Assembly (NCBI RefSeq): GCF_001194135.2
Contig: NC_068989.1
Location: 26,909,407 to 26,960,715 of the forward strand
Length of the DNA: 51,309 bases
Reading direction: 5' to 3'
Origin: Octopus bimaculoides
Lineage: Eukaryota
Part shown: positions 4,221-27,856 of the stretch, piece after piece
Position numbering within the stretch: position 1 is the stretch's first letter
Layout of the letters: every line of letters begins with the position of its first letter
The notes under the pieces: model-generated
The model's input: the letters and a program-made list of their open reading frames with translations, nothing else
What the model was told of the DNA's origin: nothing
Database searches by the model: none
Made by a program: the position numbers and the translations under genes

Positions 4221-6249
4221 AATGAAGAGAGGAAGGGAAAAATGAGAGGAAGAGAGAAAAAAGAAAAAAGAATAAAAGAGTAATGAGAGTAAAAAGAGCG
4301 AGAGAGAGAGAAACGAAGCGGAAGAGACAAGAAAAATATGAAGGCTGACAGACGTGAGAAAAGGAGTATCAGTTGGTTGTCAAGATAATGTGGGGGAGGA
4401 TGGGAGAGGAGTGGGAGAGAAATGGTTAAGAAGTGATGAGAAGGTAAGGAGTGAGTAAGTGTGAGATATACGGGTAGGGGTGATATGATAGTTCTGTATT
4501 AAAGGATGGGTAGAGAAAAGGATGGGTGGGTGATACCAAAGTAAGCAGTAGTTTTAGTAGTAAAATTCAAAGTGGAGGGAAGAATACAAGGATGTCAAAA
4601 TTTCTCTAAATACACGTATGTAATAGGTTGGTGTGAGAGGCAGAAATCACAGAGGAGGAAAGAAGGTATAATGACATGCGTACGCTCGCACCTACGTACA
4701 TATACATATGCGCATTTTCATACATATATATAAACGTGCATGCTCACACGCATTCATAAAGCATTCATACACGCATATGCGTGCGAATACATATACATGC
4801 ATGCACACATACATATATGCAGGCGCACGCACGCGCGTATACTTATAGACACATACACACACACTTATATATATTTGTATATACATATGCACGCATATAT
4901 GCATTCCACTTTTTTCGACTTGTTTCACTTTTATCTCGTTCTCCTTCTACCTTTCTCGTCCTTCCCTTGTCTCGCCACTAATAACGCCCACACCGACATT
5001 CACATCCTCTCACCATGCCTGACCTTCACTCCTTCCTCCAACATCTTCAGTCCCTTCTTCGCCGTTTTCTTTCTTTTTTCCCCCACAATGCTTGCAACCC
5101 ACAAAAAACCTCTCTTGCTTGCTTTTCAAAAAGNNNNNNNNNNNNNNNNNNNNNNNNNNNNNNNNNNNNNNNNNNNNNNNNNNNNNNNNNNNNNNNNNNN
5201 NNNNNNNNNNNNNNNNNNNNNNNNNNNNNNNNNNNNNNNNNNNNNNNNNNNNNNNNNNNNNNNNNNNNNNNNNNNNNNNNNNNNNNNNNNNNNNNNNNNN
5301 NNNNNNNNNNNNNNNNNNNNNNNNNNNNNNNNNNNNNNNNNNNNNNNNNNNNNNNNNNNNNNNNNNNNNNNNNNNNNNNNNNNNNNNNNNNNNNNNNNNN
5401 NNNNNNNNNNNNNNNNNNNNNNNNNNNNNNNNNNNNNNNNNNNNNNNNNNNNNNNNNNNNNNNNNNNNNNNNNNNNNNNNNNNNNNNNNNNNNNNNNNNN
5501 NNNNNNNNNNNNNNNNNNNNNNNNNNNNNNNNNNNNNNNNNNNNNNNNNNNNNNNNNNNNNNNNNNNNNNNNNNNNNNNNNNNNNNNNNNNNNNNNNNNN
5601 NNNNNNNNNNNNNNNNNNNNNNNNNNNNNNNNNNNNNNNNNNNNNNNNNNNNNNNNNNNNNNNNNNNNNNNNNNNNNNNNNNNNNNNNNNNNNNNNNNNN
5701 NNNNNNNNNNNNNNNNNNNNNNNNNNNNNNNNNNNNNNNNNNNNNNNNNNNNNNNNNNNNNNNNNNNNNNNNNNNNNNNNNNNNNNNNNNNNNNNNNNNN
5801 NNNNNNNNNNNNNNNNNNNNNNNNNNNNNNNNNNNNNNNNNNNNNNNNNNNNNNNNNNNNNNNNNNNNNNNNNNNNNNNNNNNNNNNNNNNNNNNNNNNN
5901 NNNNNNNNNNNNNNNNNNNNNNNNNNNNNNNNNNNNNTACATGTACCCACATACATATATATACATACATAAAAATACATGCAGACATTTAGACAAACAT
6001 GTATCCGGTTGTGTGTCCAAATACGTAGTATTTAAAGATTGAGATACATAAAGTAAGATAGGAGCGTTAAAAAATTAAATATTAAAGATTAAAATGGAGA
6101 TAAGGGTAAGTTAAATAGAGTTGTTGGGGATTACCTAAGGGATGTTCTGGGTATATGCTGTGTCGTTATTTAGGTTACATTGAGAGTTGTGGTAACGTTT
6201 GAAGGTATGAAAAAAGCGGTGGTTGCATGTACCTAGGGCTTCATTATAT

Positions 6250-12446: not shown

Positions 12447-13738
12447 CAGGGTGGGGAAGCAAAATTTACAATGAACTTTAAGTTGCTTTTTCTCAGCAGG
12501 CACTAAGTCAATTGTTTTGAAACCTAGCATATATTGATGTCAGGATCATACTTGACACTATTATCCTTACCTTTTCAGAAATTTTTGCCCACGTGAGTAA
12601 TCAGGAAAGCAAATGTCAAAGAGTGTGTGATTTGCTGAATGCACTCGCCACACCAAAGGAGATTTCAAGAATAGTTGGAGTGTCCATAAAGACTATTTAT
12701 AATGTAAAGAATAGAATGGATATGAGAAAAAATATTACGAGGAAGTCTGGAAGTAGAGAATCAACAAAAAACGTACCAAAGCTTTTATTAAAGCTCTCAA
12801 ATCCAAAATTCTGAAGGATCCAACCAAATCCACGAGAAAGATGGCAATTGAACTTGAAGTAGACCACAAGGCCATTACAAATGCAGTAAAATATGATTTG
12901 AGGTAAAAAAAATCTTACACAAGAACACCAAAACACTTGTTGACAACAGCTATGAAGGAAAAGGGATTGGAAAGGTGCAAGAAAATTATTACATGGTTCA
13001 AGAAAAAGTCCTCCATTGTAACGATCGTTTCAGATGAAAAGATCTTCACTGTCAATGCTGTTCTGAGCCGCAGAAATGACAGATTTATCGCAAAACCAAC
13101 TGCTGAGGTTAAGGGGACATTCAAAATAAAACATCCTGCTCAAGTTATGGCTATTGGTGTTGTGGCTTCCGATGGAAAGAAAATACCTATAAAATTCTAC
13201 AAAGCTGATGAAAAGATCAATGTTAATACTTACTACAAGACTCTGAGATACCAGGTATTGCCATGGCTTAAAGCAAATTACCCAGATGGTAATTATGTAT
13301 GGACACAGGATGGTGCTCCAGCCCACACAGCTAGAAATATACAAGATTTCTGCAAATCCAACTTTAGCAATTTTTTGGAATCATGTTTATGGCCGCCTTT
13401 TAGCCCAGATCTAAACCCTCTGGATTATGCTATTTGGGGCGTTTTAGAACATGCTATCAATAGAACATCACACAGCAATGTCGACTCTCTTAAAGATACT
13501 ATTAAAGAAGAATGGGAGAAGTTGTCTCCTGAATATTTGAGGAACACTTGCACAAGTTTCAGGAAGCGTGTGAAGGCAGTTATTGAGCAAGAAGGAGGAC
13601 ACAGAGAATAAAAACATTTTCTATTATGTAGATTTTCTTGTGACAAATAAATTCTCATAACTTTCGATAAACTAATTGGTCATACACTGTCTTTCAATCC
13701 CTGCCTCCAAACATTGTAAATTTTGCTTCCGCACCCTG
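12447..13738 (+). mobile_element. Full-length Tc1/mariner element, DD37D (maT-type), 1292 bp
   Basis: 27-bp TIRs CAGGGTGGGGAAGCAAAATTTACAATG (12447-12473) and its complement at 13712-13738 with 1 mismatch, flanked by TA within a (TA)n tract. Confidence 0.95.
12593..13611 (+). pseudogene. DD37D transposase with one frameshift (about 12755) and one in-frame TAA (12904)
   Basis: N-terminal HTH-like region EISRIVGVSIKTIYNVK. Catalytic SDEK, QDGAPAH and SPDLNPLDY motifs with 37 residues between the second and third Asp. The start codon reads GTG. Confidence 0.93.
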
Positions 13739-14449
13739 TATATATATATGTATATACACACAAAAAATCATGAGTTAGAGGTTATACAACCGTCTAAGGG
13801 TTGAATATATCTGTAGGCACTACTGGTGTATAACCTCGCTATGTATAGGCCTTGCTATAAGGGTAACAGTAGTTGGTAATTTAACTGGTAGAACCGTGGT
13901 TTAATATATTCAGATAAGAAAAGAAATGGAGCAACAATTATCAATTAGAAGTTGATCATTGGTATTAAAAGATCATAGTTTAATTGTAGTTCAAGAACAT
14001 TTACAGCTGTTTGAGTTTGTGATTTCGTCGTAAATTTTCATCTATGTCCTTCCATTTAACAAACATCGTCAGAATGATTTAGAGTTTATTGGAGGAAAAT
14101 AGGATGGAGAAAAAGGAAAATAAAAAGAAAAAGGAAAAAACGAAGAAGTTCGTTAAGCCTTTAGGCTTACATTTTTGTGCCCTTGTAGGTTTCGTGTGTG
14201 TGTACGTTTCTTCAATTAGATGCATGGAGCAATAAGTGGGGAAAATGACCAGTTGACCGGCGGTGTTAGTCGAAGGAGTTTTACCTAGTAGTAATATCCG
14301 GTGCTGTTAAATGTAAGAAATAACGCTGACAATGTTTATTAAAGGGACCGAGAAAAATGCAGATGCTTATGCAACTTCTATCTACAATGCAACAAATTAC
14401 TCTATCTAGATACGATCAGGAAGAACCGATGCTCTTTGCTCATGCACAT

Positions 14450-14830
14450 ATTGGCGTGTTCCGAAAATCCAGTGGGAACCTGTCAGTCAGTTGGAAGTGA
14501 CTGAGTAGTTCTGTGAGGATTTTACATCTCCTCACCTACCGACTAGTCCCACCCGAATTACAAGTGCGTCTAATATCGCCAACAAGACCTAAAGAGTGAG
14601 GCGTCTCAATGAAGTCTTCCAAACATCTGAAGAAATCTGACTTCCCCGCCCCAGTCCAGGAAAATAGTCCGTGTCCAGGAGTATCATACGTATCCTGCCT
14701 CCCATTCTAGGCTGACTAAGAGATACGTCCAAATTAGGGGCTAGATCGTGTGTGTCAGAAACCCTGGTCTCATTGACTATCGTCACATGCATAGCTAGTG
14801 ACCTGAATACTAGTTGTTCTCTGCTTTGCA
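14450..14830 (-). pseudogene. APE endonuclease fragment of a Tx1/L1-like LINE
   Basis: Minus strand gives ETRVSD, SDFFRCLEDFIETPHSLGLVGD and LLSHFQLTDRFPLD. Similar at DNA level to 26640-26930 (+) and 30875-31141 (-). Confidence 0.7.
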
Positions 14831-14849
14831 ATTTGCGCTTTACAGACGG

Positions 14850-16510
14850 AGAATTTGAGTTTCATGAATCGCTCTTTCAATTAGAGCAGGGAACATTTCA
14901 TTAGGTAAACGTCAAGGTTAATTGTTTTTGCCTTTCTTCCATCTCTCAAGGATGTTCCAGTCTTGCTCTTTTTGTACATGCTGGCTCTCTAAGCATTGCT
15001 ACAGAGCATTAATGTTTCGAGGGAAAACCCCTGTGCGGAATGTTTATATCGGCTTATGCAGACGACGTCGACGTAATATTGTGGTGATCGGCACTACCCT
15101 AGGGGAATACGAAGCGGTGACAAGAGGAAAGATAAGCCAGAAGTCGGTGGACCTGCACCTCGGCACCTGGAGAGTCAAGTCCCACAGCATCGTAGTATGC
15201 TCTTCGCAAAATCCTTTTTAAAATGCACAAAACCTCGTTTGGTTCGGACCTCTAGACAGAGAACTGTGGGACGTGACGAGCAGGAAGGTAAATCTCATCC
15301 AGAAATAGACAGAGAGGAAGGTATCTCAAAAATGTCGGGTAGGGTGGTAAATACGCACATCGCTTCTGTCATCTAGTACCGCGTCATCGTCACGGCTAAT
15401 TTTGTACTCGAGTGCACTGATACTTCGATATCTTCTGCATGTCCTTGCCGTTGAGCAAGTGTAGCTGCCGTTCGTCAGGCAGGAATTATCTGCAGCTCGT
15501 CCTATTGACGGAGTTATAGTCATGCATCTAGCGTATACCGAGAAAGGGTGCTGGGCTTCTAAAGTGCCCAGAAGTGCTCACAGCTCCCTACCAATCAGTC
15601 AATATAGCTGGAGGAGTTTCCATATCGGAGCTGTAAAGTGGATTAGTGACGGACAAGAGCGATGACGTCCTCATGGAAACCCGGAGCGTCGGGAAGGGAC
15701 AAACAACTGATCTTTACCAGGGGATTTTCGGGCTGGGGCCTATGGATAATTTCCAGAAATCCATCGCTTGGCAATACTACCGGGGTATCTCTGCCGGTTC
15801 GAGAAAAGCTCAACAGGCATGAAAGTGCTGTCTGACGGGCCTGTTTGAGATGTGCACAGGGCGATGAAACTGTTCTGCATGCACTGTTACAGTGCCCGAA
15901 AATTGCCGACTTGTGGAGCTTTGTGGAACAACTGCTGGTGTGTGTAGGACGGCAGAGTCAGAATCGCTGCACCACCTTATTTTGGCTGAGAAAGGTATAT
16001 AGATTGCTTTTGTTTAGTGGCTATGTCGAAAGAGATATCATGGTGGATGAGGATTAAAGAACTGAAGACAGAGCCTCTCCACTTTGGCGAAGTCCTCATT
16101 GGCTTACAAGTTCTACTTGTAATGGAGAGTGAGGGGGAGAGTAAAATCTTTCCGCTACTGCCAGTTTTTTTTGTTTGTTTTTTTTTAGAACGTGGATGAA
16201 TGTTACGAGGATGGCCCCTATGAATGGGCCTGCTCTGAACATACACTTGTAAACAGGAGGAGTTTAGGAAGAGAGAAGTAAGTGTCGGAGAGATAACTGT
16301 CGGAATACCCTTGGCATTCGGTATAGCCAGGATGTGTGGGGTTTCTTACTTGAACTAAGGTGGAAATTCCGATTTTGCGAAATTTGAAATTTTCTTGTTC
16401 AAATTTTGGCTTTAATATATACACATGTCCTTGTACTAAAGCGCACCTATTCCTTGTTTTGTATTGTTCCTTATTGTTTTGTGTTCAGTTCTTGTTGCCT
16501 ATTATAAAGA
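14850..16510 (+). mobile_element. Tx1/L1-like LINE 3' half (RT, CCHC finger, 3' UTR), decayed
   Basis: QGC motif near 14955, ISAYADDV near 15050, C-terminal RCAQGDETVLHALLQCP finger at 15845, and a T-rich UTR ending TATTATAAAG. Confidence 0.85.
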
Positions 16511-18349
16511 CTATTATTATTAGATCTTAGTTATTCCTTAATATCCATGTAGACTGTTCACTTTCATCAAATTTAGCAGCATTATCATGTGCAAGAAGCT
16601 ACAGCATAGCGCTATAGTTAAATCAAATGTAAATTGATACAGTCTATAGTCGATTAAAGCAACATTAACAATAAGTTTTGTGACTGAAGGAAAGCTAATT
16701 GAGGATTGTGCTTTAGTTGTGTAAAATACTGACAATGCAGCTTTATATATCAACGAGAAGAAGTTCAAATCTAAAGTCTCAAAGTCGATTATTGCTAAAT
16801 GTGAAAAAGGATCTAATAGGAACCAAAGAAATACTTTAAGTCATTCTTTTCAACGATCTAAAATTATTTCCCTTAAGAGTCAACTTTTATGATGATTATG
16901 CGATGGTAACTATATTAGATTTTTATAGGAATTAACTACGCTGCAATGATCATACACAAAGGATTAGTAAATATTTTAAATGCAGCCACAATAAAATATA
17001 CTTAAGGAAGCCTATAGTCGATTGAAGCAACTTTAACGTTTCCATTTCGGAATGCTAATGATATGAGAAAGATAAAATGCATGGTTGTCGTCAAATATGA
17101 TTTCAATAAACACTTAAAATAGATATCGCGAAACATTTTGTCCTACGCTTTAAGATCCCTTGTCACTCATTAAAGATTAATTTGAATATCTCGATGCGGA
17201 TTCCATTTTTAGTAGCTACCAGTTTGTTTTTTTATATATATATATGTTAAGCTTTTGGTCGTATATTTCCACTATTTTACTACGTTTTATTGAAATTCAC
17301 AGTATTGAAGCAATTTCAGAAAACTGAATAAAAGTAAATAAATCAGTGTAAAATATGTCTTGAACATATGTTATAATATTTTCTACTATTGGATACTTTA
17401 CCCCAAAGCTATGGAATATTTCAAAATTTTAAAACAAATTCTCAATGATAGATCGATGACAAATAGCTAATACTTATATATCTAAATATTTTTACATTTT
17501 TTAAGAGAGAGAAAGAGAGAGTGAGAGAGAATATGTGAGTGTGTGTGTGTGTGTGTGTATGTGTTTGTGTTATTTTTTCTGCTTGGTGTCTGATTATTTG
17601 AATCCAAATGAAAACATATTGATCTTCTAGTCATACAGAATGAAAGTGAAGTAAGTCAAAGAATATTCAAATGAAAGTCGTGCAAAGAAACAATATATTG
17701 AAGGACACTTGGAAGAGCATAATATTGATAAGAATTATAATCAATCGATATTTTAATATTTGCATTTGAATCTAACCTCTGTGTAGAATCGAAAGATATG
17801 AAAAAAAGTCTGACATACAAATGACATACAAATAATGCGATATATTCAGACTTCAACGTCAGAAAAAAAATTCGAAAGTATTTATGTTGTGTTGTATATT
17901 TTTATTCTGATCTTAGTTTTTATTTATTAAAACATGAAGATCGCCATTAATCATTTTCATCACCATCGTAATCATCAACATCGTCCTACTTATCATCATC
18001 ATCATCATTATCAATATTATCGAAAGAAAAAAATTACAAATATCATCGGTGTCGTTGACACCAATATTTTTGTTCTTTTTGCTGTTTTGATTTTCTCAAT
18101 ATCACATCTACATTTAAAACTGTCGTTTTTTTTTACTATTTCTGCTCTTACGATAACTAATACTACAATTGATACTAATACATGTTAAAGCACAAAGATT
18201 TAGTTTGTAGTCTCATTTACATCCTGTTTCATCTGGTACCAGTTACTTATTGATTGCAAAGATATATAATGTGTAATGTCCGAGAGGAAGAAGTCTGTGC
18301 TAATATACGAAAACATCATCATCATCACTATCATTATTATTATTTGATA

Positions 18350-18624
18350 TGATATGGTGTTTTCCACAGTTATAATGTGTGGCCATTTTTGTGACTGTAG
18401 CTGTTGTATCTACTCTGGTAGCCATGATTTTTTTTTTGTATTAGATACAGCGTATCCCTTCTATACCGGAATGGTAATAAACCGCTTCGTCTATCATGCT
18501 ATCGCTGATAGCTCTGCAAAACACCGAATTTGAACTGTCTACCTTGACTCTGACTCGAACTCGACTAAACATGCAACTTACTCTTAACTCCAATTCAGAC
18601 TCGCACAACGACTGACACATGACC
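18350..18624. repeat. Left part of an interrupted LTR-like repeat (target of the retroposon array)
   Basis: Collinear with 23302-23580 (TTCCACAGTTATAATGTG, CTGTAGCTGTTGTATCTAC, GACTCGAACTCGAC, ACTCGCAC, CAACGACTGA.ACA.GAC). Confidence 0.85.
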
Positions 18625-20163
18625 CAATTTCTTTATATGGCCACACAGGACCTGACATAGAGGCGACAAAAAAGGACAAAGTGGGGAAGACAAAAAGAAA
18701 ACGAATGAAAAAGATGGAATTGAAAACTGAAAAAGGAATGAACGCTACTCGACCCCATGACCGGGTAGTTTCATTGAATCTTTTTTACAACACATTCGAT
18801 TGCTTTTTCTTTTCTTTTTTCCTTCTAAATCACAGTCAAAATACTACGATAACAATTACAGTTATATGTTGGATCCTACTATACACAATTACATAATCTT
18901 TTTCCATTTTTATTGGGGGGGGGCACAATTATAAAACATAACTTAAGCCGTTAAAACATTACTGTGATAATCATTGTTCAAAACTGAGTCAAAGATTTTT
19001 AAGTTGCAATTACCGTTCATTCTTATTGTCCCTGAATAAATTTCACTCAAACTTACATTACGCTGTAACGTGTTCAGGTCGACGTCTCTTCTCGTGTAGT
19101 AGACATATCTCCTGCATTTGCTTTTTAACTTATGATAATTCACTTTCAACATGAGGAAACACCTTACACTTGGGTGTAACACTTCTATATCAGAGTTCAC
19201 CATCTCAACTTCTTTTCTCACTCAGACGTTTACACTGTTGTATAAAGCGATAAGGTACGTTTCCCTGGATGAAGGGTTGGGAGTTTGTTGGTTTTGTGTG
19301 TTTGCATTATTTGTGTCTCTATCTGGAGGGGTAAATATAGGGTTGGGTGGAGCAGGAGAGAAGGTACTGGATTGGGTTGGGGTTCTTCCTCACAGGTTTG
19401 CTGTTTTCTTTTTTCCTGTTCTCTTTTCCTCTTCTCTTTTCCTCTTCTTGCCCACCTCTGTCCATTATGTTGATTTTTCTTTTTGTACTCCTGTTTTTTT
19501 CTTTTCTCTACTGGAGATTCTTTTGGTTCTTCTACGGGGTGGAGAGGAAACCACTTGGCCTTTATGTGTCCCAACTGTCCACAGTTGTAGGACCTCGGCC
19601 TTCTACCTTCCACCACAACTCTAAACCTCACCTCGTCTCCTCCCGTTATATTGTTGACCATCTCTAAGGCATCCTGGATTATTATTATTTCCAGTGTCTG
19701 CACTAGCCAATTCTTCGTTGGTATCTTTGTCGTCTGTAGGATTGTAATCCTTTCCTCGAAGCCCATTACAATTGTCGCAATTATCCAGTTTATTCCTTCC
19801 ACTCTTACCCTAGTTGCACGTCTTCCCAGGTAGATAGGTAGAAGTGCTACCTTGTCTGTCTTTATGGAGATCGCGAAATGATACCTGGCTATCGCCTCGC
19901 AGGTAAACCGTACCTCCACCGCCGCGAATTTCGGCCCTCTGGTAATGTAGATAATGTCCCGCCAGGTGGGTCTTAGTGCTTTTCTATTAGGTCTTTAGCC
20001 AATATTTCCATCTTGTTGGATTTCGGGTTATCTGTTCTGTATGCGATACTTCTTTCCTTGATAAATCTTGTATTGTCGATAGGGGGCGACGCTTTCACCT
20101 GCTGTCCAACGTTTCTTTACATTTTTGCATTTCCTTCTGTATCACGATGTTAACAGGATGAAA
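18625..20163 (-). mobile_element. ORF1-only LINE derivative B (about 1.5 kb)
   Basis: ORF 19919-19230 plus 19221-18943 contains LPIYLGRRATRVRV and a degenerate knuckle RSYNCGQLGHIKAKW. About 320 nt of 3' UTR ends GGCCATATAAAGAA. No ORF2. Confidence 0.8.
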
Positions 20164-20179
20164 GACTGACACACGACTC

Positions 20180-21424
20180 TTCTTTTTTAATTAGCCACAC
20201 AGGGCCTAACACAGAGAGAACAGCACATGTTGGGGACAGAAAAAAAATGGATGGAAATGATTAATTAGATAAAATGATAAATGAAATGAATCCGTTTGGC
20301 CCCACCTCCAAGCGACTTCATTGAACCTATTAATACAACTTCGTTTTAAAATATCATTTGTGACAGTTTAAAACATTATTTCTAACAGCTAATTTTCATC
20401 TTTCCGAAGAATATCAGGTGGGTCGTGGATTGGGGTTGGTGTCTTTAAGAAGGAGTTGGAGAAGAGTGGGTGTGGGTGGGAGTCGGGTGGGTGTGGGTGG
20501 AAGTCGGGTGCGTGTGGGTGGGAGTTGGGTGCCTGTGGGATGGGGTCGTCATTTACAAAGTGTTCGTTTTCCTTCTCTTCTTTTTTTCCAGCCGTTTCCC
20601 ATCCGTTCTTTTCCTCGTTCACTTCCTCNNNNNNNNNNNNNNNNNNNNNNNNNNNNNNNNNNNNNNNNNNNNNNNNNNNNNNNNNNNNNNNNNNNNNNNN
20701 NNNNNNNNNNNNNNNNNNNNNNNNNNNNNNNNNNNNNNNNNNNNNNNNNNNNNNNNNNNNNNNNNNNNNNNNNNNNNNNNNNNNNNNNNNNNNNNNNNNN
20801 NNNNNNNNNNNNNNNNNNNNNNNNNNNNNNNNNNNNNNNNNNNNNNNNNNNNNNNNNNNNNNNNNNNNNNNNNNNNNNNNNNNNNNNNNNNNNNNNNNNN
20901 NNNNNNNNNNNNNNNNNNNNNNNNNNNNNNNNNNNNNNNNNNNNNNNNNNNNNNNNNNNNNNNNNNNNNNNNNNNNNNNNNNNNNNNNNNNNNNNNNNNN
21001 NNNNNNNNNNNNNNNNNNNNNNNNNNNNNNNNNNNNNNNNNNNNNNNNNNNNNNNNNNNNNNNNNNNNNNNNNNNNNNNNNNNNNNNNNNNNNNNNNNNN
21101 NNNNNNNNNNNNNNNNNNNNNNNNNNNNNNNNNNNNNNNNNNNNNNNNNNNNNNNNNNNNNNNNNNNNNNNNNNNNNNNNNNNNNNNNNNNNNNNNNNNN
21201 NNNNNNNNCATTGCTTCATTTATTCTCTTCAAACATTCAATCAGCCCTTCCTCAGACGACGTAAAGTCTGAAGAAGAAGTATTCAAACCTTCGTATTCCA
21301 TTATGAAGGCACGAAACTACGACATTCCCCCATCAAACAAGATGTCGAACAATACCACCGCAAGACGGCAGAACGCACGTGTTCTACACAAAGACACCAG
21401 TTGAACAGTAATCAACAAGGCAAT
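20180..21424 (-). mobile_element. Short LINE derivative C (about 1.25 kb including a 580-N gap)
   Basis: ORF starts MEYEGLNTSSSDFTSSEEGLIECL (compare element A, MASEEAIEECMEEC), ends in an E/K- and P/H-rich tract, and has the same 3' tail (TAGGCCCTGTGTGGCTAATTAAAAAAGAA). Confidence 0.7.
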
Positions 21425-21438
21425 GACTGACACACGAC

Positions 21439-23195
21439 ATATCTTCATTGGCCATCGGGGCCCTACACAGAAAGGACAGCACAAGGACAGACACTACAAT
21501 ACAAAGTGAGGACATAAAACATGAACGTATGGAGGGGAATGAACTATATAATAAATGAAGGTGAAATGGCGACACGAGCCCCATTTTCGAGTGGTTACGT
21601 TAAGCTGCTTTTGATGTTATAGGATTTTTATCTGTTTTTCATTTAATAATATCAAAATTTACTCACATTTTTTTACCAGTTTATATATGGTGCTAATCCT
21701 TCAAAGTTTACGACTGGAGGTAGGGTATTGTACTACACCTCCAATCTTAAAGGGTCAATCTTCGAACCGAAAAATTCCCTCAATATGGCGGGTCTTTCCC
21801 TGTCTATCAGTATGCATTTTGTGTTTTCTGTGTAATCTTCTGCCGGCAATTTAACTCTTATCACCGATTTGAAGTTGGTGATAATTCGTTCAATATCCGT
21901 GCTTTTAGTATGCCATTATGTATGCTTAGTTTTTAGGGAGGATTTTGCGGGACTGTGTGTTATGCCACTCTGTGCCTGTGTATGCTTGTTTACGTGGACT
22001 ATCTGGGATGGTTTCCTTTTGGAGGAACTTTGCTGTGTATGTGTATCTTGTGTGCTGTATGCTTGCTGTATAATCTCCTCTATTTTGCTGTTCTTCCTCT
22101 TCTACTTTGTAATTTTAGGAGATGTATTCACCGTTTCCTTTCTTTACTTTTTCGATACTTCAGCGAATCCCTCCTCCTTTGTATCGTCCATACTCTCCTC
22201 CTGGGCTCGGGCTGCCGTTACGGTAGCCTTCTTCGTTCCTCTGGTTCTCTGTGATTTCACAGTTTATCGGGAAGCACTTTATTTTAATGTGCCCCTTTTC
22301 TCCACAGTGGTAGCAGGTAAGCGGTTTTCCCTCTAACACTGCTCTCAGCTCTGTATCTTGCGGCAACAGCACCTATTCTGCTATTTCATCCAAGAGTGGC
22401 CTGGATAAAGATTTCCAGGCCGTAATCCCACTAATTCATTTTCTTCGTTCTTGCAACTTGGATTAACTGTGCAACTTCTGTGGTTCTGTACATCACAGCT
22501 GCCCCCAGCCACGCTTCTTTCAGGTGACACTCTGCTGATCATAATTCTTGCAAATCTTTTGCCGTAATAGTTCGGAAGGAGCACGCACTCTTGTGATCTC
22601 AGCGGCACAGTGGAATGATTGCCTCTTCTTCTGTGGAAAACCTCACCCCACTGTGCCATATCTTCTCCCTCTAGTGTAGAATGTCGCAGCACTCTTCCAT
22701 ACATTCCTCAATGGCTTCCTCTGATGCCATCTCTATTTTCTTATTGGTTATGGACATCGTTCTGTATACCACCGTCCTCCTTCTGGTGGTTACATCCTCC
22801 GGAGGTGGGGGAGGGGTCAACCTTTATCTTAATCCCTCCTTCTGGATCAGTTCCTTGCACCTCTCCAACTTCTCTCTTTCAATCGTCACTTCCGTACCTC
22901 CACGACATTCATTGTGGTGGTACAACTTCCAGCTGCCGAGGCATAGCTCCCGGTATAGGCTCGTTCCGGTACGCTGTTCATTTTTTCCAAAGTCTCTTCG
23001 CCCTTAAATGGGGAAAAGAAAACAAACAATTTCACAGGCCCGCAGACAAAACGGCAACAGTCTTCAAAGGAATTCAACAATAGGCACAAAGCTTTCAACA
23101 GTCATACAAACAAGGATAATCGACGAATCACAAGGGTTTAAGCAAAAGCGAATAACGCAGATACTCGGCTGTACACCGAACGGCGTACATTCGCT
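21439..23195 (-). mobile_element. ORF1-only LINE derivative A (about 1.75 kb)
   Basis: Frameshifted ORF1 with LPNYYGKRFARIMI and an intact gag-type knuckle CYHCGEKGHIKIKC, followed directly by a 3' UTR ending GGGCCCCGATGGCCAATGAAGA. No ORF2. Confidence 0.85.
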
Positions 23196-23301
23196 GACTG
23201 ACACACAACTACCTGTACTGGTGACGTTGTCTCACTCTATAGTGGCTGTGGATGGTTGCTTATATTCTCACGAATTGCTTATATTATCGTCACAACTGTT
23301 A

Positions 23302-23888
23302 TGATGTGGTGCTTTCCACAGTTATAATGTGACGCCACCGTTGTTACTGTAGCTGTTGTATCTACCCTAGCAGCCACGATATTTCCGTGGTATCGTATAC
23401 AGCCTTTCTCTTCTATACCCTCTTCAATACACCGTTTCGTCTATCGCTGACAGCTCTACAACACACAGAATTTGAGCCATCTAGCTTGACTATGACTCGA
23501 ACTCGACAATAACACGTGACTGACACTTAACTACAACTGAGAACTCGCACAGCGACTCTACAACGACTGAAACACGACTCCCTGTACTGATACAGCCCGT
23601 GGCGTGTGCAGACAATTCGCCGATTGGACAATGGGCTGATTGGGCAATAAGTCGATTGGACAATTGGCTGATGGACAATATGTCGACATGCGGAACGAGG
23701 AGAAAGAAAGCTTCTATACAAAGCGAACACCTATATTATTGATAGATCCAATCGGTGAATCATCCTGTCTGTAAGTTATCTGCCGGCCAATTGTCTGTTG
23801 CCGGCCATTTGTCTGTTGGCCATCTGTCTGTCAACGAATTGTCCGTCTAGCACTCTGTGGCAGGGGGTGTACCATTTCCGATACAACA
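23302..23888. repeat. LTR-like repeat with an empty target site; carries a MITE insertion at 23604-23856
   Basis: Termini TGATGT... and ...ACAACA (TG..CA, 5/6 inverted match). Contains the uninterrupted GACTGAAACACGACTCCCTGTACTG at 23565-23589. Confidence 0.65.
23604..23856. mobile_element. MITE with repetitive subterminal arms
   Basis: Left arm AGACAATTCG plus GGACAAT repeats, right arm complement CGAATTGTCC plus TGTCTGT repeats, flanked by the direct repeat GTGGC (23599-23603 and 23857-23861). Confidence 0.7.
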
Positions 23889-23903: not shown

Positions 23904-24286
23904 TTATTGCCTCCACCTTCGCGAAGGCGGAGGTATTGTTTTTAGTCGTCTTTGCTTGTTTGTTTCTTTGTTTGACGATGGACAAATTATCTCACGAACC
24001 GCTGGATGGATTCGGATGAAACTTTCAGAGATGTTTGGTCTCATGACTGGCACGCGTTGGTTAGATTCTGGAATCGAGCCGGCACCGGACAAAGATACTG
24101 GATTATTTTTCCTGTATTTTTTTACTTCATTTTGAAGAGCAGTCGAGTTCATTTTAGTATTCTTGTTTGTTAGAGTAGTCGGGTTTATTTCAGATATTTT
24201 CATTTTAAAAATAATCTCTGGCTAATCGTTGAGAGGATGTTAGTGTTGCCTTGGCGGAGATTTGCGATCTCTGGGTGCTCTTGTTA
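23904..24286 (+). mobile_element. Helentron-associated non-autonomous element (DINE-1/HINE-like)
   Basis: 5' hairpin CCTCCACC-TTCGCGAA-GGCGGAGG, a (TTTG)n tract, GGATGAAACTTT, and a 3' subterminal repeat GCCTTGGCGGAG followed by CTCTGGGTGCTCTTGTT. Confidence 0.7.
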
Positions 24287-24559: not shown

Positions 24560-26950
24560 CATTCAAGATGAAGACGAAAAGCGGGAGTGAGGAAGGAAGG
24601 TGTTACGGCAATTTGCACGAGGACTTCCACCTCGCCACCATGATTGGCAGTAGACAGCAGGAAGAAAAGAAAGAAAGGAAGAAAGAAAGAAAGCAAGAAA
24701 GAAAGAAAGAAAGAAAGAAAGAAATAAAGAAAGAAGAAGAAGAAGAAGAAGAAGAAGAAGAAGAAGAAGAAGAAGAGTCAAAATACGAAGAAATAAGAGG
24801 AAGAGCAGAAAGATGGCGAGAGGAAGGAGGAAGTAAAGTCTTTCACATTACGTAGATATTGTAGGAGCACGAGGAACAACATTGACAACAATTACGGAGA
24901 GTCTAACAAAATGGAGTAAACGGAGGGAAAGGGACTTTTGCAAATATCGTGGCAGCTAAGGAATTGTTTAATATCTCATTGGAGAACAAAATTAAAAAAA
25001 AAAACTAGACAAGATAGCAAAATATATGAAGATGAATGGAAGGAAGGCAAAATCGACGTCTCCAAGCGATGTGCTTGAAGCAACAGCGAAACGGACAGTT
25101 GACTAAAGGTGCGTGAACACAAAGACAAGGAAACTCGAAAACACTACACGCGAAGAGGAGCAAAAGGCCTTGAAAGACATATAGCAGGATATCCACCACA
25201 TTGCGAGAGCGAGGCAGCACGGCGGAGTAGAGGTCCTTTTTAAGAGTGAGGAGCAGGCGATACAGAGCTCGGTGACTACGCGTCGTAGCGAGGAAATCGC
25301 ACACTTCCCAACGTACATGGGAAGAATGGCGGTACGAATTACGGTACCTGAGTTCCACCAGGCCTGGATTTATGGTGGATCCTCGTCTGTATTTGTATGG
25401 ACAGGGGAGAGAAACTCCTGAATATTAAAAGATTGAGGAGGGAGAATAGGGTTGCGACTACCTTGGAGGTTCTTCTCCACGTGATGCCAGAGCAGTTAGA
25501 GAAAGTCCCAGGCCTGATTTTCCTCTCGAATGGAGTAGAGCTAAGAGGGAACGTGAAGGGCAGACAGTTGAGGTGCCACGATTGTCGTTCAACGGGCCAA
25601 TTACGTTTTTTCTACCCGCAGAACCAGAACAGAAGGGCAGAAAGAAATGTCTAAACGAAAGCACCATAACCCATCAGTCGACTATAACAACAACAACAAG
25701 AACAAAAAAGGCAGGGAAATAGAAATAGAAATTAAACCCAAGGAGACAAAAAGGGAAGGTATTACAGTGAAGGTGGAAGTGGGAGCAGCACTAGCAGCAG
25801 TGGCGGAAGCTATAGTAGCAGGAGTAACAACAACTACAATAGAACCAGAAGAAACAACACCAGAAGAAACCATAAAAGACATGGACTCCTCCATGTATCC
25901 AAGTGATGAAGAAGTGGAAAGCCCAAAAGGCAAAAATCAAGAAAGATACACAGGGAAAAGGCTGAAATCCAAGAATCTGCAAACACAGACACACTGATAA
26001 CACCAACATCACAAACACCTACAACAGAATCAAAACAAAACAAACTTTTATAAGAAAAATGTCACTGCAACAACAGCCATCTGCGCAGCAGCGGAATTTC
26101 GTGCTGGTGAGGAGGTCCAATAAAGGTCTGATGGCTATCATAGCACAAAACGAGAAAATTGAAACATAGGGTGTGACTTGCGCCCTAGCACTTTTAGAGT
26201 ACCAGAGAGCTTAATGATGGTATGAGTGACATTAGAGACTTATACGAGCATTAAACGGAGCTACCAGTATTTCATTGGATTTCCCAGTGAAACGGCCAGG
26301 AGATGACTTTTAAGGGGGTTCCCTGAGTAACCCAACAAAACAGACTGGGTGGGAGAACCACACGACTACAAACAGCACCAGAAGTGTTAGTAACAGTCCA
26401 TTTTCTGTTCGTTACTTCCTGGCCAGCATGGCGGTTCTTATAGTAGATTGTATAAATAAACGTGACTTTAGGTTGTCATGGAAGCAACGATGCTTGCGCA
26501 TCGACCTCAAGTGGCTAAGTCTGGATGCAATAGCCGTCAGTGAGATCACGATCGTGGACATACGGTCCTTGGCTCCCATTTTCGAATGGAGGTTTGGGTT
26601 ACAGTGTTGTTCAGAAAAGGTCTGGATCTCGAGATACGGGAGATTTTCCTGGACCTGGAAAGTAAGTCGGTGTTCCTGGACGTGAACGACAACGAAGGCA
26701 GTGCTTCTAGACTAGTTTCTGTGTACACACCAACTGGAGTGAGGCAACCGGAGTTCTTCAGGGACGTCTCACACTTTAGTCTTAGTGAGTGAATGGAACG
26801 CTATTTTAGATGTACGTGTGGATTGGGTGAGGCGAGTAGATGAGGAAGTGGAGTACGCAAGTCTTGCAAACCTGCTCAATCGTTCCCAGGTGGCGAACAG
26901 GTTTAGGCTGGATTTCTTGAACACTCCAGTGTGAACATGGGCAAACATTG
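24560..26950 (+). mobile_element. Tx1/L1-like LINE 5' half D: decayed ORF1 plus start of ORF2 APE endonuclease
   Basis: ORF1 motifs PTYMGRMAVRITV and GRQLRCHDCRSTGQ are homologous to elements A and B. ORF2 from about 26428 has LDAIAVSE, RLVSVYTPTGVRQPEFF and WNAILD. Truncated at about 26950 by an R4-like insertion. Confidence 0.8.
24660..24776. repeat. (GAAA)n(GAA)n purine microsatellite
   Basis: Read directly. Confidence 0.9.
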
Positions 26951-26954
26951 TTGG

Positions 26955-27250
26955 GTCGTCCAAATCTTTTCTGAAGAGGGATGAATTGCATCTTGTGTTT
27001 CCTAACTTGTTCAGTTTTGAGGCTTCTCTTCTACTCAGGTCTTGTCTTAAAGTCTTCACTATAAATTGTAGTCTCATTTTCCACATTTGCCATTTCTTAA
27101 TCTTTCCCTGTGAGATATATAATCTTCTGCTGACTACTGCCCCTCCTACATAGATCAATAAGTTAGTGTCTTCCATATTTTTAGTATCTATCTTCCTGAT
27201 AGCAGAATCTACTTTCGTTGTCATTTCCAAAATGTTTAGCGTCATTGCAT
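26955..27250 (-). pseudogene. R4/Dong-like LINE N-terminal fragment
   Basis: IDTKNMEDTNLLIYVGGAVVSRRL..WKMRLQFIVKTLRQDLSRRE matches the pre-RT region pattern of R4-clade ORFs as I recall it. Confidence 0.65.
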
Positions 27251-27545: not shown

Positions 27546-27856
27546 NNNNNNNNNNNNNNNNNNNNNNNNNNNNNNNNNNNNNNNNNNNNNNNNNNNNNNN
27601 NNNNNNNNNNNNNNNNNNNNNNNNNNNNNNNNNNNNNNNNNNNNNNNNNNNNNNNNNNNNNNNNNNNNNNNNNNNNNNNNNNNNNNNNNNNNNNNNNNNN
27701 NNNNNNNNNNNNNNNNNNNNNNNNNNNNNNNNNNNNNNNNNNNNNNNNNNNNNNNNNNNNNNNNNNNNNNNNNNNNNNNNNNNNNNNNNNNNNNNNNNNN
27801 NNNNNNNNNNNNNNNNNNNNNNNNNNNNNNNNNNNNNNNNNNNNNNNNNNNNNNNG

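What the first reader, a model, noticed from the sequence alone, without database searches (positions are those of the whole stretch)
18350..23297. Three retroposons stacked head-to-tail at one sequence-specific site inside an LTR-like repeat
Seen: the motif GACTGACACACGAC(TC) occurs four times, at 18610-18624, 20164-20179, 21425-21438 and 23196-23210. It separates three minus-strand elements (B, C, A) that share a related 3' tail ending in GGCC/GGCT plus an A-rich run abutting the motif. Joining the flank left of 18624 (TCGCACAAC-motif) to the flank right of 23196 (motif-CCTGTACTG) rebuilds the uninterrupted sequence present next door at 23545-23589. Known: the Tx1 clade includes sequence-specific families, for example Xenopus Tx1L/Tx2L, which insert into other transposons. 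Inference: repeated, independent, same-orientation insertions at one target, each duplicating about 14-16 nt, by a site-specific APE-type LINE machinery that targets another repeat. The three elements are diverged from each other, so this is not a tandem duplication.
Basis: partly seen in the sequence, partly recalled or inferred. Interest (0 to 1): 0.85.

Follow-up and report, generated by a model that had tools for sequence, protein, structure and literature searches.

The report
Stacked gag-only retroposons at one octopus target
Three old, unrelated-looking copies of a small "gag-only" jumping gene sit head to tail at exactly the same 14-base spot of an Octopus bimaculoides repeat, the signature of a target-specific L1/Tx1-type LINE machinery, which is a known kind of behaviour with a new target and new passengers.

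Summary
GACTGACACACGAC occurs four times at the stated places and a fifth time in an uninterrupted paralogous repeat next door. Shuffles give 0.15 matches on average. Joining the outer flanks rebuilds that paralog.

The three minus-strand inserts are not ordinary truncated LINEs. Each carries only a decayed ORF1 (gag-like, with a CCHC knuckle) and a 3' UTR. None has any trace of ORF2. Their last ~50 nt align with the 3' ends of full-length octopus LINEs that carry the same ORF1 family and an APE+RT+zf-RVT ORF2, whose closest solved relative is human L1 ORF2p.

A and B share only 26-44% of ORF1 residues, and B starts inside ORF1. So the motif at B's 5' end is target DNA, a 14-nt target-site duplication (TSD), not an element terminus. 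The assembly gap lies inside C, and both of its sides are colinear with one related element.

Best reading: sequential target-primed insertions of ORF1-only, trans-mobilised retroposons into one site that each TSD regenerates. Kojima 2015 describes the same behaviour for Tx1-Mar/SINEU in crocodilians.

Verdict: new member of a known kind, moderate interest.

The parts
18345..18609 (.). Host repeat, copy 1, part left of the insertion site
   Evidence: 77% identical to 23297-23557. Alignment.
18610..18623 (+). Target motif/TSD copy J1 (GACTGACACATGAC), between the host repeat and the 3' end of B
18625..20163 (-). Element B, 1539 nt, ORF1-only and 5'-truncated. The ORF1 core with its CCHC knuckle is open over 19233-19994. 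A weak C-terminal-domain match lies in ORF 18943-19221. The 3' UTR and tail span 18625-18940.
   Evidence: The ORF1 profile matches B at E=1.7e-55. The N-terminal profile shows that B begins at about profile position 52, inside ORF1 and ~300 nt short of A. No ORF2 remnant was found.
20164..20177 (+). Target motif/TSD copy J2 (GACTGACACACGAC, followed by TC as in the empty site)
20178..21424 (-). Element C, interrupted by assembly gap 20629-21208. The 5' UTR and ORF1 start (MEYEGLNTSSSDF...) lie at 21209-21424, and the ORF1 end, 3' UTR and tail at 20178-20628.
   Evidence: Both sides of the gap are colinear with the related element in L001. Tail alignment.
21425..21438 (+). Target motif/TSD copy J3 (GACTGACACACGAC)
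21439..23195 (-). Element A, 1757 nt, apparently full length. It comprises a 5' UTR, a whole ORF1 spread over three frames (at least 3 frameshifts plus stops), the CCHC knuckle at ~22270-22310, the ORF1 C-terminal domain, and a ~240-nt 3' UTR and tail.
   Evidence: ORF1 profile pieces are colinear across the frames. zf-CCHC matches at E=7.7e-5, the C-terminal domain at E=1e-7 and the N-terminal profile at E=3e-17.
23196..23209 (+). Target motif/TSD copy J4 (GACTGACACACAAC)
23210..23221 (.). Host repeat, copy 1, last ~12 nt right of the insertion site (TACCTGTACTGG)
   Evidence: Aligns with 23579-23589 of copy 2.
23297..23589 (.). Host repeat, copy 2. This is the empty site, with the uninterrupted motif GACTGAAACACGAC at 23565-23578.

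Best explanation
Three separate target-primed reverse transcription events placed three diverged, non-autonomous, ORF1-only retroposons (A, C and B, all on the minus strand) into the same 14-nt site of a ~290-bp Octopus bimaculoides repeat.

The elements encode only a gag-like ORF1 protein: two RRM-like modules, one CCHC knuckle and a C-terminal domain. They keep the 3' UTR and tail of autonomous octopus LINEs of the L1/Tx1 type. They are therefore presumably copied in trans by that LINE's ORF2 protein (APE endonuclease, RT and zf-RVT).

Inferred steps:
1. The endonuclease nicks the window's + strand after ...GACTGACACACGAC.
2. The freed 3' end primes cDNA synthesis on the A-rich RNA tail.
3. 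The other strand is cut 14 nt away, so the 14-mer is duplicated on both sides of the insert.
4. Because the whole target is duplicated, every insertion leaves two intact targets. Later insertions then stack head to tail with one motif between neighbours.

Shown: the anatomy, the divergence of the elements, B's 5' truncation, the empty paralogous site, and the shared tail with autonomous LINEs. Inferred: trans-mobilisation, the nick positions, and sequence recognition by the endonuclease.
For: - Motif: four copies plus the one in the empty paralog, where 0.15 matches are expected by chance.
- The joined flanks rebuild the paralog.
- The elements are independent. A and B share 26-44% aa, and the only DNA match is 69% over 116 nt of the 3' UTR/tail, between B and C.
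- B starts inside ORF1 yet is still bounded by the motif. The motif is therefore not an element 5' terminus.
- C's relative L001 has the same tail but no motif after it. The motif is therefore not a fixed 3' terminus.
- There is no ORF2 remnant within 18625-23195, although ORF2 relics are detected elsewhere in the window.
- The same ORF1 family sits upstream of an APE-type ORF2 in L002, L007 and L008.
- That ORF2 has Exo_endo_phos, RVT_1 and zf-RVT domains, and its best solved match is human L1 ORF2p at E=2e-71.
- The terminal ~50 nt align between A, B, C and the autonomous LINEs.
- Relatives are target-bound. L008 is flanked on both sides by (ATT)n.
- Relatives also lie head to tail: L007 is an array of at least 3 LINEs, and four Logan contigs show the same arrangement.
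- Precedent: Tx1-Mar and SINEU insert into Mariner-N4_AMi with a 16-bp TSD, and tandem insertions sandwiching a TSD are reported (PMC4494074).
Against: - Specificity for this motif rests on one locus, that is three events plus one empty paralog. No genome-wide tabulation of flanks was possible.
- The intact target in copy 2 (23565-23578) and a 10/14 look-alike (23518-23531) are unoccupied.
- In another sample set, relatives' tails are always followed by CTTGCYTCCGG... This could be a conserved 5' terminus rather than a TSD. MAFFT places the window motif in the same 14-nt slot.
- The tails show no complementarity to the proposed primer.
- No partner ORF2 with this target has been identified.
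- C's continuity across the gap is inferred, not read.
Confidence: 0.72

Rival explanations
1. The 14-mer is a native terminal sequence of this retroposon family, for example the start of the 5' UTR. The 'host repeat' would then be a fourth family member or a solo 5' end. Arrays would arise because new copies land exactly beside resident copies, or through read-through or recombination, without a TSD.
For: In Logan contigs L001, L009, L010 and L016, every observed 5' end starts with the same CTTGCYTCCGG... directly after another retroposon's tail. MAFFT puts the window motif in that same 14-nt slot, and the distance to the next conserved anchor is 21 nt in both. The host repeat read on the minus strand is GT-rich like the 5' UTRs and ends in an (AAT)n/(GAT)n run.
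Against: B begins inside ORF1 and still carries the motif at its 5' side. The sequence just after the motif is unrelated in A, C and B. In the empty paralog the motif has 11-12 nt of conserved host sequence on its other side, CAGTACAGGKA, which is also found upstream of A. C's relative L001 lacks the motif.
Confidence: 0.13
2. The array was built elsewhere and arrived here as a block. This could happen by DNA-level duplication or conversion between host-repeat copies, or by retrotransposition of a read-through transcript spanning several elements. In that case this locus records one event, not three.
For: The host repeat is locally duplicated. Read-through across head-to-tail junctions is plausible if the Logan contigs are transcripts.
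Against: B, the 3'-most element of the array, is the 5'-truncated one. A single read-through cDNA would truncate the 5'-most element, A. Sequential site-specific insertions are still needed at the source locus. No second copy of the array exists in the window.
Confidence: 0.1
3. The array is an assembly or scaffolding artefact that stitches unrelated contigs together at a short shared motif.
For: The assembly is a draft with 15 gaps in 51 kb, one of them inside C.
Against: All four junctions lie within contiguous sequence, two per contig. A 14-nt repeat is too short to misjoin contigs. The two sides of the gap match one related element colinearly.
Confidence: 0.03

Closest known systems
Tx1-clade target-specific LINEs and their SINE passengers: Tx1L in Tx1D (Xenopus), and Tx1-Mar with SINEU in Mariner-N4_AMi (crocodilians), Kojima 2015, PMC4494074
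   Same: - An APE-type LINE machinery inserts into one short site inside another repeat.
- The TSD is 14-16 nt.
- Non-autonomous passengers share the target.
- Tandem insertions 'sandwiching a TSD' are explicitly described there.
- Relatives here also include a microsatellite-bound member (L008 in (ATT)n), like Kibi and Koshi.
   Different: - The host is a mollusc.
- The target is an unclassified ~290-bp repeat, not a known DNA transposon.
- The passengers are ORF1-coding elements of 1.5-1.8 kb, not snRNA- or tRNA-headed SINEs.
- Clade membership of the partner was not shown by RT phylogeny.
HAL1 (half-L1) elements of mammals, and HeT-A of Drosophila
   Same: These are non-LTR retroposons that keep ORF1 (gag) and the 3' end but have no ORF2, so they depend on an RT supplied in trans. 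HeT-A also forms head-to-tail arrays. (From my own knowledge, not tested here.)
   Different: HAL1 has the L1 type-II ORF1 (coiled coil, RRM, CTD) and no target specificity. HeT-A attaches to chromosome ends and not to an internal sequence. The ORF1 here has RRM-like modules plus one CCHC knuckle.
R1 elements of arthropod 28S rDNA
   Same: Site-specific APE LINEs with a 14-bp TSD. (From my own knowledge.)
   Different: R1 targets a conserved rRNA gene. Its ORF2 lacks the L1-type zf-RVT C-terminus seen in the octopus relatives. No rRNA or other Rfam family matches the target here.

Membership tests
Non-LTR (LINE-dependent) retroposon inserted by target-primed reverse transcription | Target-site duplication flanking the insert, supported by an empty site | tested here: met
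   A 14-nt motif lies on both sides of each of the three inserts. The joined flanks align with the uninterrupted paralog.
Non-LTR (LINE-dependent) retroposon inserted by target-primed reverse transcription | A conserved 3' end with a short, variable A-rich tail, and 5' truncation in some copies | tested here: met
   Tails align and their A-rich runs differ. B is truncated inside ORF1.
Non-autonomous, ORF1-only LINE derivative (HAL1-like architecture) | ORF1 is present, ORF2 is absent, and the 3' end is shared with an autonomous LINE | tested here: met
   ORF1 profile hits are found in A and B. tblastn with a related ORF2 finds nothing in 18625-23195 but does find relics elsewhere in the window. 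The tail is shared with L007 and L008. For C, the middle is hidden by the gap.
Tx1 clade of LINEs (as the mobilising partner) | The RT domain groups with Tx1 in a phylogeny (RTclass1 or similar) | not testable with these tools
   No reference RT set was available. Indirect evidence: relatives' ORF2 is APE+RVT_1+zf-RVT and closest to human L1 ORF2p, and L1-Tx1 is the only L1-type class listed among the recently active LINEs in O. vulgaris (PMC13282606). None of 107 homologues carries a Tx1 name.
Tx1 clade of LINEs (as the mobilising partner) | An autonomous copy with the same target, or the same tail, in the same genome | tested here: inconclusive
   Similar tails occur on autonomous LINEs of O. 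vulgaris and O. sinensis, and on a relic at 14911-16520 of the window. None of them abuts the motif.
Sequence-specific (target-specific) retrotransposon family | A large share of genomic copies lie in the same target (more than 20% of flanks in Kojima 2015) | not testable with these tools
   Only this locus could be examined: 3 of 3 copies in the window lie at the site.
   The copies are 75 nt apart once the inserts are removed. The ends read TGAT...TACTG. No coding region lies between them.

The most novel reading that the evidence does not exclude
Octopods may harbour a whole class of gag-only (ORF1-only) retroposons that, together with their L1/Tx1-type partner LINEs, build head-to-tail arrays. 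Each insertion would regenerate its own target. Different lineages would have switched targets: this 14-mer, (ATT)n, and CTTGCYTCCGG.... That would be a self-perpetuating 'safe-harbour' strategy. It could seed long arrays or satellite-like arrays, and it would explain part of the unclassified repeat load of cephalopod genomes.
Probability: 0.3. Interest if true: 0.55.

Novelty: new member of a known kind. Interest (0 to 1): 0.4.

Why it matters
Target-specific LINEs are natural site-directed insertion systems, and each new target adds to the known range of endonuclease specificities. This case points to an uncharacterised 14-nt target in a cephalopod.

It also shows that coding, ORF1-only passengers use the target, not only SINEs. 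That bears on how ORF1 and ORF2 functions can be separated in trans. Finally, it offers a concrete handle for annotating some of the many unclassified octopus repeats.

The principle of tandem insertions sandwiching a TSD in another repeat is already published, so the gain is incremental.

Tried and rejected
- **Known RNA gene as target.** Rfam at gathering threshold over the whole window, Rfam at E-value threshold on 23150-23750, and ARAGORN gave nothing usable.
- **More copies in the window.** BLAST of A, B, C and the host repeat against the window found only the copies already described.
- **Homologues of B's ORF through the word index.** One hit, and five with a profile. The exhaustive representative search found 263.
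- **Exact look-ups of the window's own ORFs.** Only the mariner fragment is on record. That identified the assembly but gave no independent contig for the array.
- **P0003 look-up.** No contig on record.
- **L001 3' flank against the host repeat.** No similarity beyond shuffles.
- **Motif in 16 fetched loci.** The exact motif was searched in the first 8 loci, and the motif with up to 2 mismatches in 11 loci. L001, L006, L011, L012 and L016 were never searched with mismatches allowed, and L016 was only read by eye. It was absent in all.
- **Species of SRR11869384-391.** Not found in the literature. The only hit was a different accession.
- **Naming the clade from homologue names.** No Tx1 label among 107 ORF2 homologues.
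- **Linking ORF1 to the fish ZCCHC3-like RBD domains.** hhalign aligned only the knuckle.
- **Fold search with the ORF1 model.** Only weak tandem-RRM matches, best E=0.02.
- **Consensus 3' UTR structure.** A short hairpin with no compensatory changes, so it carries no weight.
Full report
**Source.** An exact look-up of a mariner transposase fragment encoded at 12937-13611 places the window on Octopus bimaculoides GCA_001194135.2, chromosome CM046609.1, near 26.92 Mb. This is a Hi-C-scaffolded short-read assembly, and the window has 15 gaps.

**Observation.** GACTGACACACGAC is found at 18610, 20164, 21425 and 23196, and once more at 23565. With up to two mismatches allowed, shuffles give a mean of 0.15 matches, and none of 100 reaches five. 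The two imperfect outer copies differ at the CpG (TG and CA), which is what decay of a methylated CpG would give.

The sequence left of the first motif (18345-18613) is 77% identical to 23297-23557. Joining 18300-18623 to 23210-23296 gives a sequence that aligns through the junction with the neighbouring copy. Similarity ends about 12 nt past the motif. So there is a filled site and, 75 nt downstream of it, an empty paralogous site.

Nothing supports calling this repeat LTR-like. The two copies are adjacent, nothing retroviral lies between them, and the ends are not TG..CA. Rfam and ARAGORN find no RNA gene.

**The gap.** The gap at 20629-21208 lies inside the middle element, C. Both sides match one related element, Logan contig L001, in the same order and orientation. 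About 780 nt are therefore expected to be missing, against 580 N written. All four junctions lie in contiguous sequence, two on each side of the gap. Only the continuity of C rests on scaffolding.

**What the inserts are.** Read on the minus strand, each insert carries a gag-like ORF1 with one CCHC knuckle, then a 3' UTR and a short A-rich tail.
- An exhaustive HMMER search with B's ORF and its one close homologue found 263 representative proteins. Many come from octopus: O. bimaculoides, O. vulgaris and O. sinensis.
- The family has a variable N-terminus and a conserved core (..IxYKT..CL.PIW..RGxKFGTVEVRF..LLPxYLGRR..IPPE..WLVAA..ILQ..NW.GQ..VEGRKPRCFKCGxKGH). A K/E-rich stretch and a small C-terminal domain follow.
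- An AlphaFold model of B's core (pLDDT 79.9) shows two beta-alpha-beta modules before the knuckle. Its best PDB matches are tandem RRMs, but only at E=0.02. 'RRM-like' is therefore a weak statement.
- A holds the whole ORF1, spread over three frames, together with the N-terminal region (E=3e-17) and the C-terminal domain.
- B holds an open core (E=1.7e-55). It begins at about position 52 of the N-terminal profile, inside the coding region and ~300 nt short of A.
- A and B share only 26-44% of residues, so they are different, old lineages.
- tblastn with a related ORF2 finds nothing between 18625 and 23195, although it detects ORF2 relics at 14380-15952 and 26598-26979.
- A has ~240 nt between the end of ORF1 and its tail. 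The 3' UTR of the full-length LINE in L007 is ~260 nt.

The inserts are therefore ORF1-only elements of 1.5-1.8 kb, not 5'-truncated LINE tails.

**The autonomous relatives.** The same ORF1 family is followed by an APE-type ORF2 in three places.
- L002, a Logan contig.
- L007, O. vulgaris OX597840.1. ORF1 is followed by an 1132-aa ORF2 with Exo_endo_phos, RVT_1 and zf-RVT domains. Its best solved relative is human L1 ORF2p at E=2e-71, against 1e-24 for R2.
- L008, O. sinensis.

The last ~50 nt of A, B and C align with the 3' ends of these LINEs, with consensus ..TTGTnTTGTCnnCTCTnTGTTnGGCCCTTGTGGCCAAT followed by an A-rich run. That fits trans-mobilisation through recognition of the 3' end.

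A published O. vulgaris repeat annotation lists L1-Tx1 as the only L1-type class among its recently active LINEs (PMC13282606). This makes Tx1 likely, but no RT phylogeny could be run, and no homologue carries a Tx1 name.

**Target behaviour of the relatives.**
- L008 is flanked on both sides by (ATT)n, as in microsatellite-specific Tx1 families.
- A relic in the window ends at ~16520, followed by ATTATTATT.
- L007 is a head-to-tail array of at least three full-length LINEs with a period of ~5.28 kb. Its left edge is visible, and the A-rich tails differ between copies. The units are 99-100% identical, so tandem duplication is not excluded there.
- In Logan contigs of an unidentified sample set (SRR11869384-391), three tails of C-like elements (L001, L009, L016) and one other poly(A) tail (L010) are each followed directly by CTTGCYTCCGG... 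and the 5' UTR and ORF1 start of a further element.

Head-to-tail stacking thus looks like a habit of the group.

**Is the motif target or terminus?** The Logan junctions revive the rival that a shared junction sequence is simply the element's 5' end. MAFFT even places the window's motif in the same 14-nt slot.

Within the window, four facts argue for target DNA:
- B is truncated inside ORF1 and still has the motif at its 5' side.
- The sequences right after the motif are unrelated in A, C and B.
- The empty paralog has conserved host sequence on both sides of the motif, and the same 11 nt (CAGTACAGGKA) precede A.
- L001, close to C, lacks the motif after its tail.

Because B, the 3'-most element, is the truncated one, the array cannot be a single read-through cDNA.

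**Mechanism.** The mechanism is inferred from established target-primed reverse transcription.
1. A sequence-specific APE endonuclease from a partner LINE nicks the + strand after ...CACGAC.
2. The ORF2 protein copies the ORF1-only RNA, which it recognises through the shared 3' end.
3. The second nick, 14 nt away, produces the duplication.
4. Both copies remain valid targets, so later insertions stack.

This is the behaviour Kojima (2015, PMC4494074) described for Tx1-Mar and SINEU in Mariner-N4_AMi, with a 16-bp TSD and 'tandem insertions sandwiching a TSD'.

**Limits.**
- No octopus genome can be searched by DNA with these tools.
- The intact target in copy 2 and a 10/14 look-alike at 23518-23531 are empty.
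- The class of the host repeat is unknown. On the minus strand it ends in an (AAT)n/(GAT)n run and could itself be a retroposon.

**Verdict.** The feature is real and correctly observed. It is a new example of a known kind, with two additions: a new target and ORF1-only passengers.

Noticed in passing
window 12937-13611 (+): A mariner/Tc1-type transposase fragment (DDE_3). The 219-aa version is an annotated protein of the assembly. It identified the window as O. bimaculoides GCA_001194135.2, CM046609.1.
   Followed up: partly
window 14380-14646 (-), 14911-15952 (+), tail near 16445-16520: Relics of an L1/Tx1-type ORF2 (29-42% identical to the O. vulgaris LINE ORF2 across the four aligned pieces). 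The 3' tail resembles those of A, B and C and is followed by ATTATTATT. This suggests a microsatellite-targeting member like L008.
   Followed up: partly
window 25161-25346 (+) and 26598-26979 (+): A further plus-strand relic of the same LINE group, with an ORF1 piece and then an APE piece of ORF2. It runs into the gap at 27546. Its ends were not mapped.
   Followed up: no
window 23518-23531: A second motif-like 14-mer, GACTGACACTTAAC (10/14), lies inside the empty host-repeat copy, 47 nt upstream of the true target. It is unoccupied. The target region is built of degenerate GACTN units.
   Followed up: no
L007 1-13026 (O. vulgaris OX597840.1): A head-to-tail array of at least 3 full-length ORF1+ORF2 LINEs with a period of ~5.28 kb and 99-100% identity. 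Each unit has an internal 26-31-nt poly(A) about 30 nt upstream of the ORF1 start. The ~250 nt between the LINE tail and that poly(A) may therefore be a separate short retroposon.
   Followed up: partly
L001 1587, L009 815, L010 1079, L016 1538: Four independent junctions in Logan contigs of an unidentified sample set. In each, a retroposon tail is followed at once by CTTGCYTCCGG(T)... and the 5' UTR and ORF1 start of another ORF1-only element. Whether this is a TSD of another target or a conserved 5' terminus is unresolved.
   Followed up: partly
window ~23918-23941; L007 ~5866-5881; L008 ~5897-5908: A near-palindrome, CCTCCACCTTCGCGAAGGCGGAGG, lies in the window downstream of the host repeat. 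Similar CTTCG(N)CGAAG palindromes occur in the 5' UTRs of the two full-length LINEs. Whether they are related is unknown.
   Followed up: no
P0036, P0125 (O. bimaculoides gene models): Annotated octopus proteins fuse an LDL-receptor-A gene or an astacin/ShK gene to a C-terminal piece of this ORF1 family. These are probably gene-model artefacts caused by intronic or adjacent copies of the retroposon.
   Followed up: no
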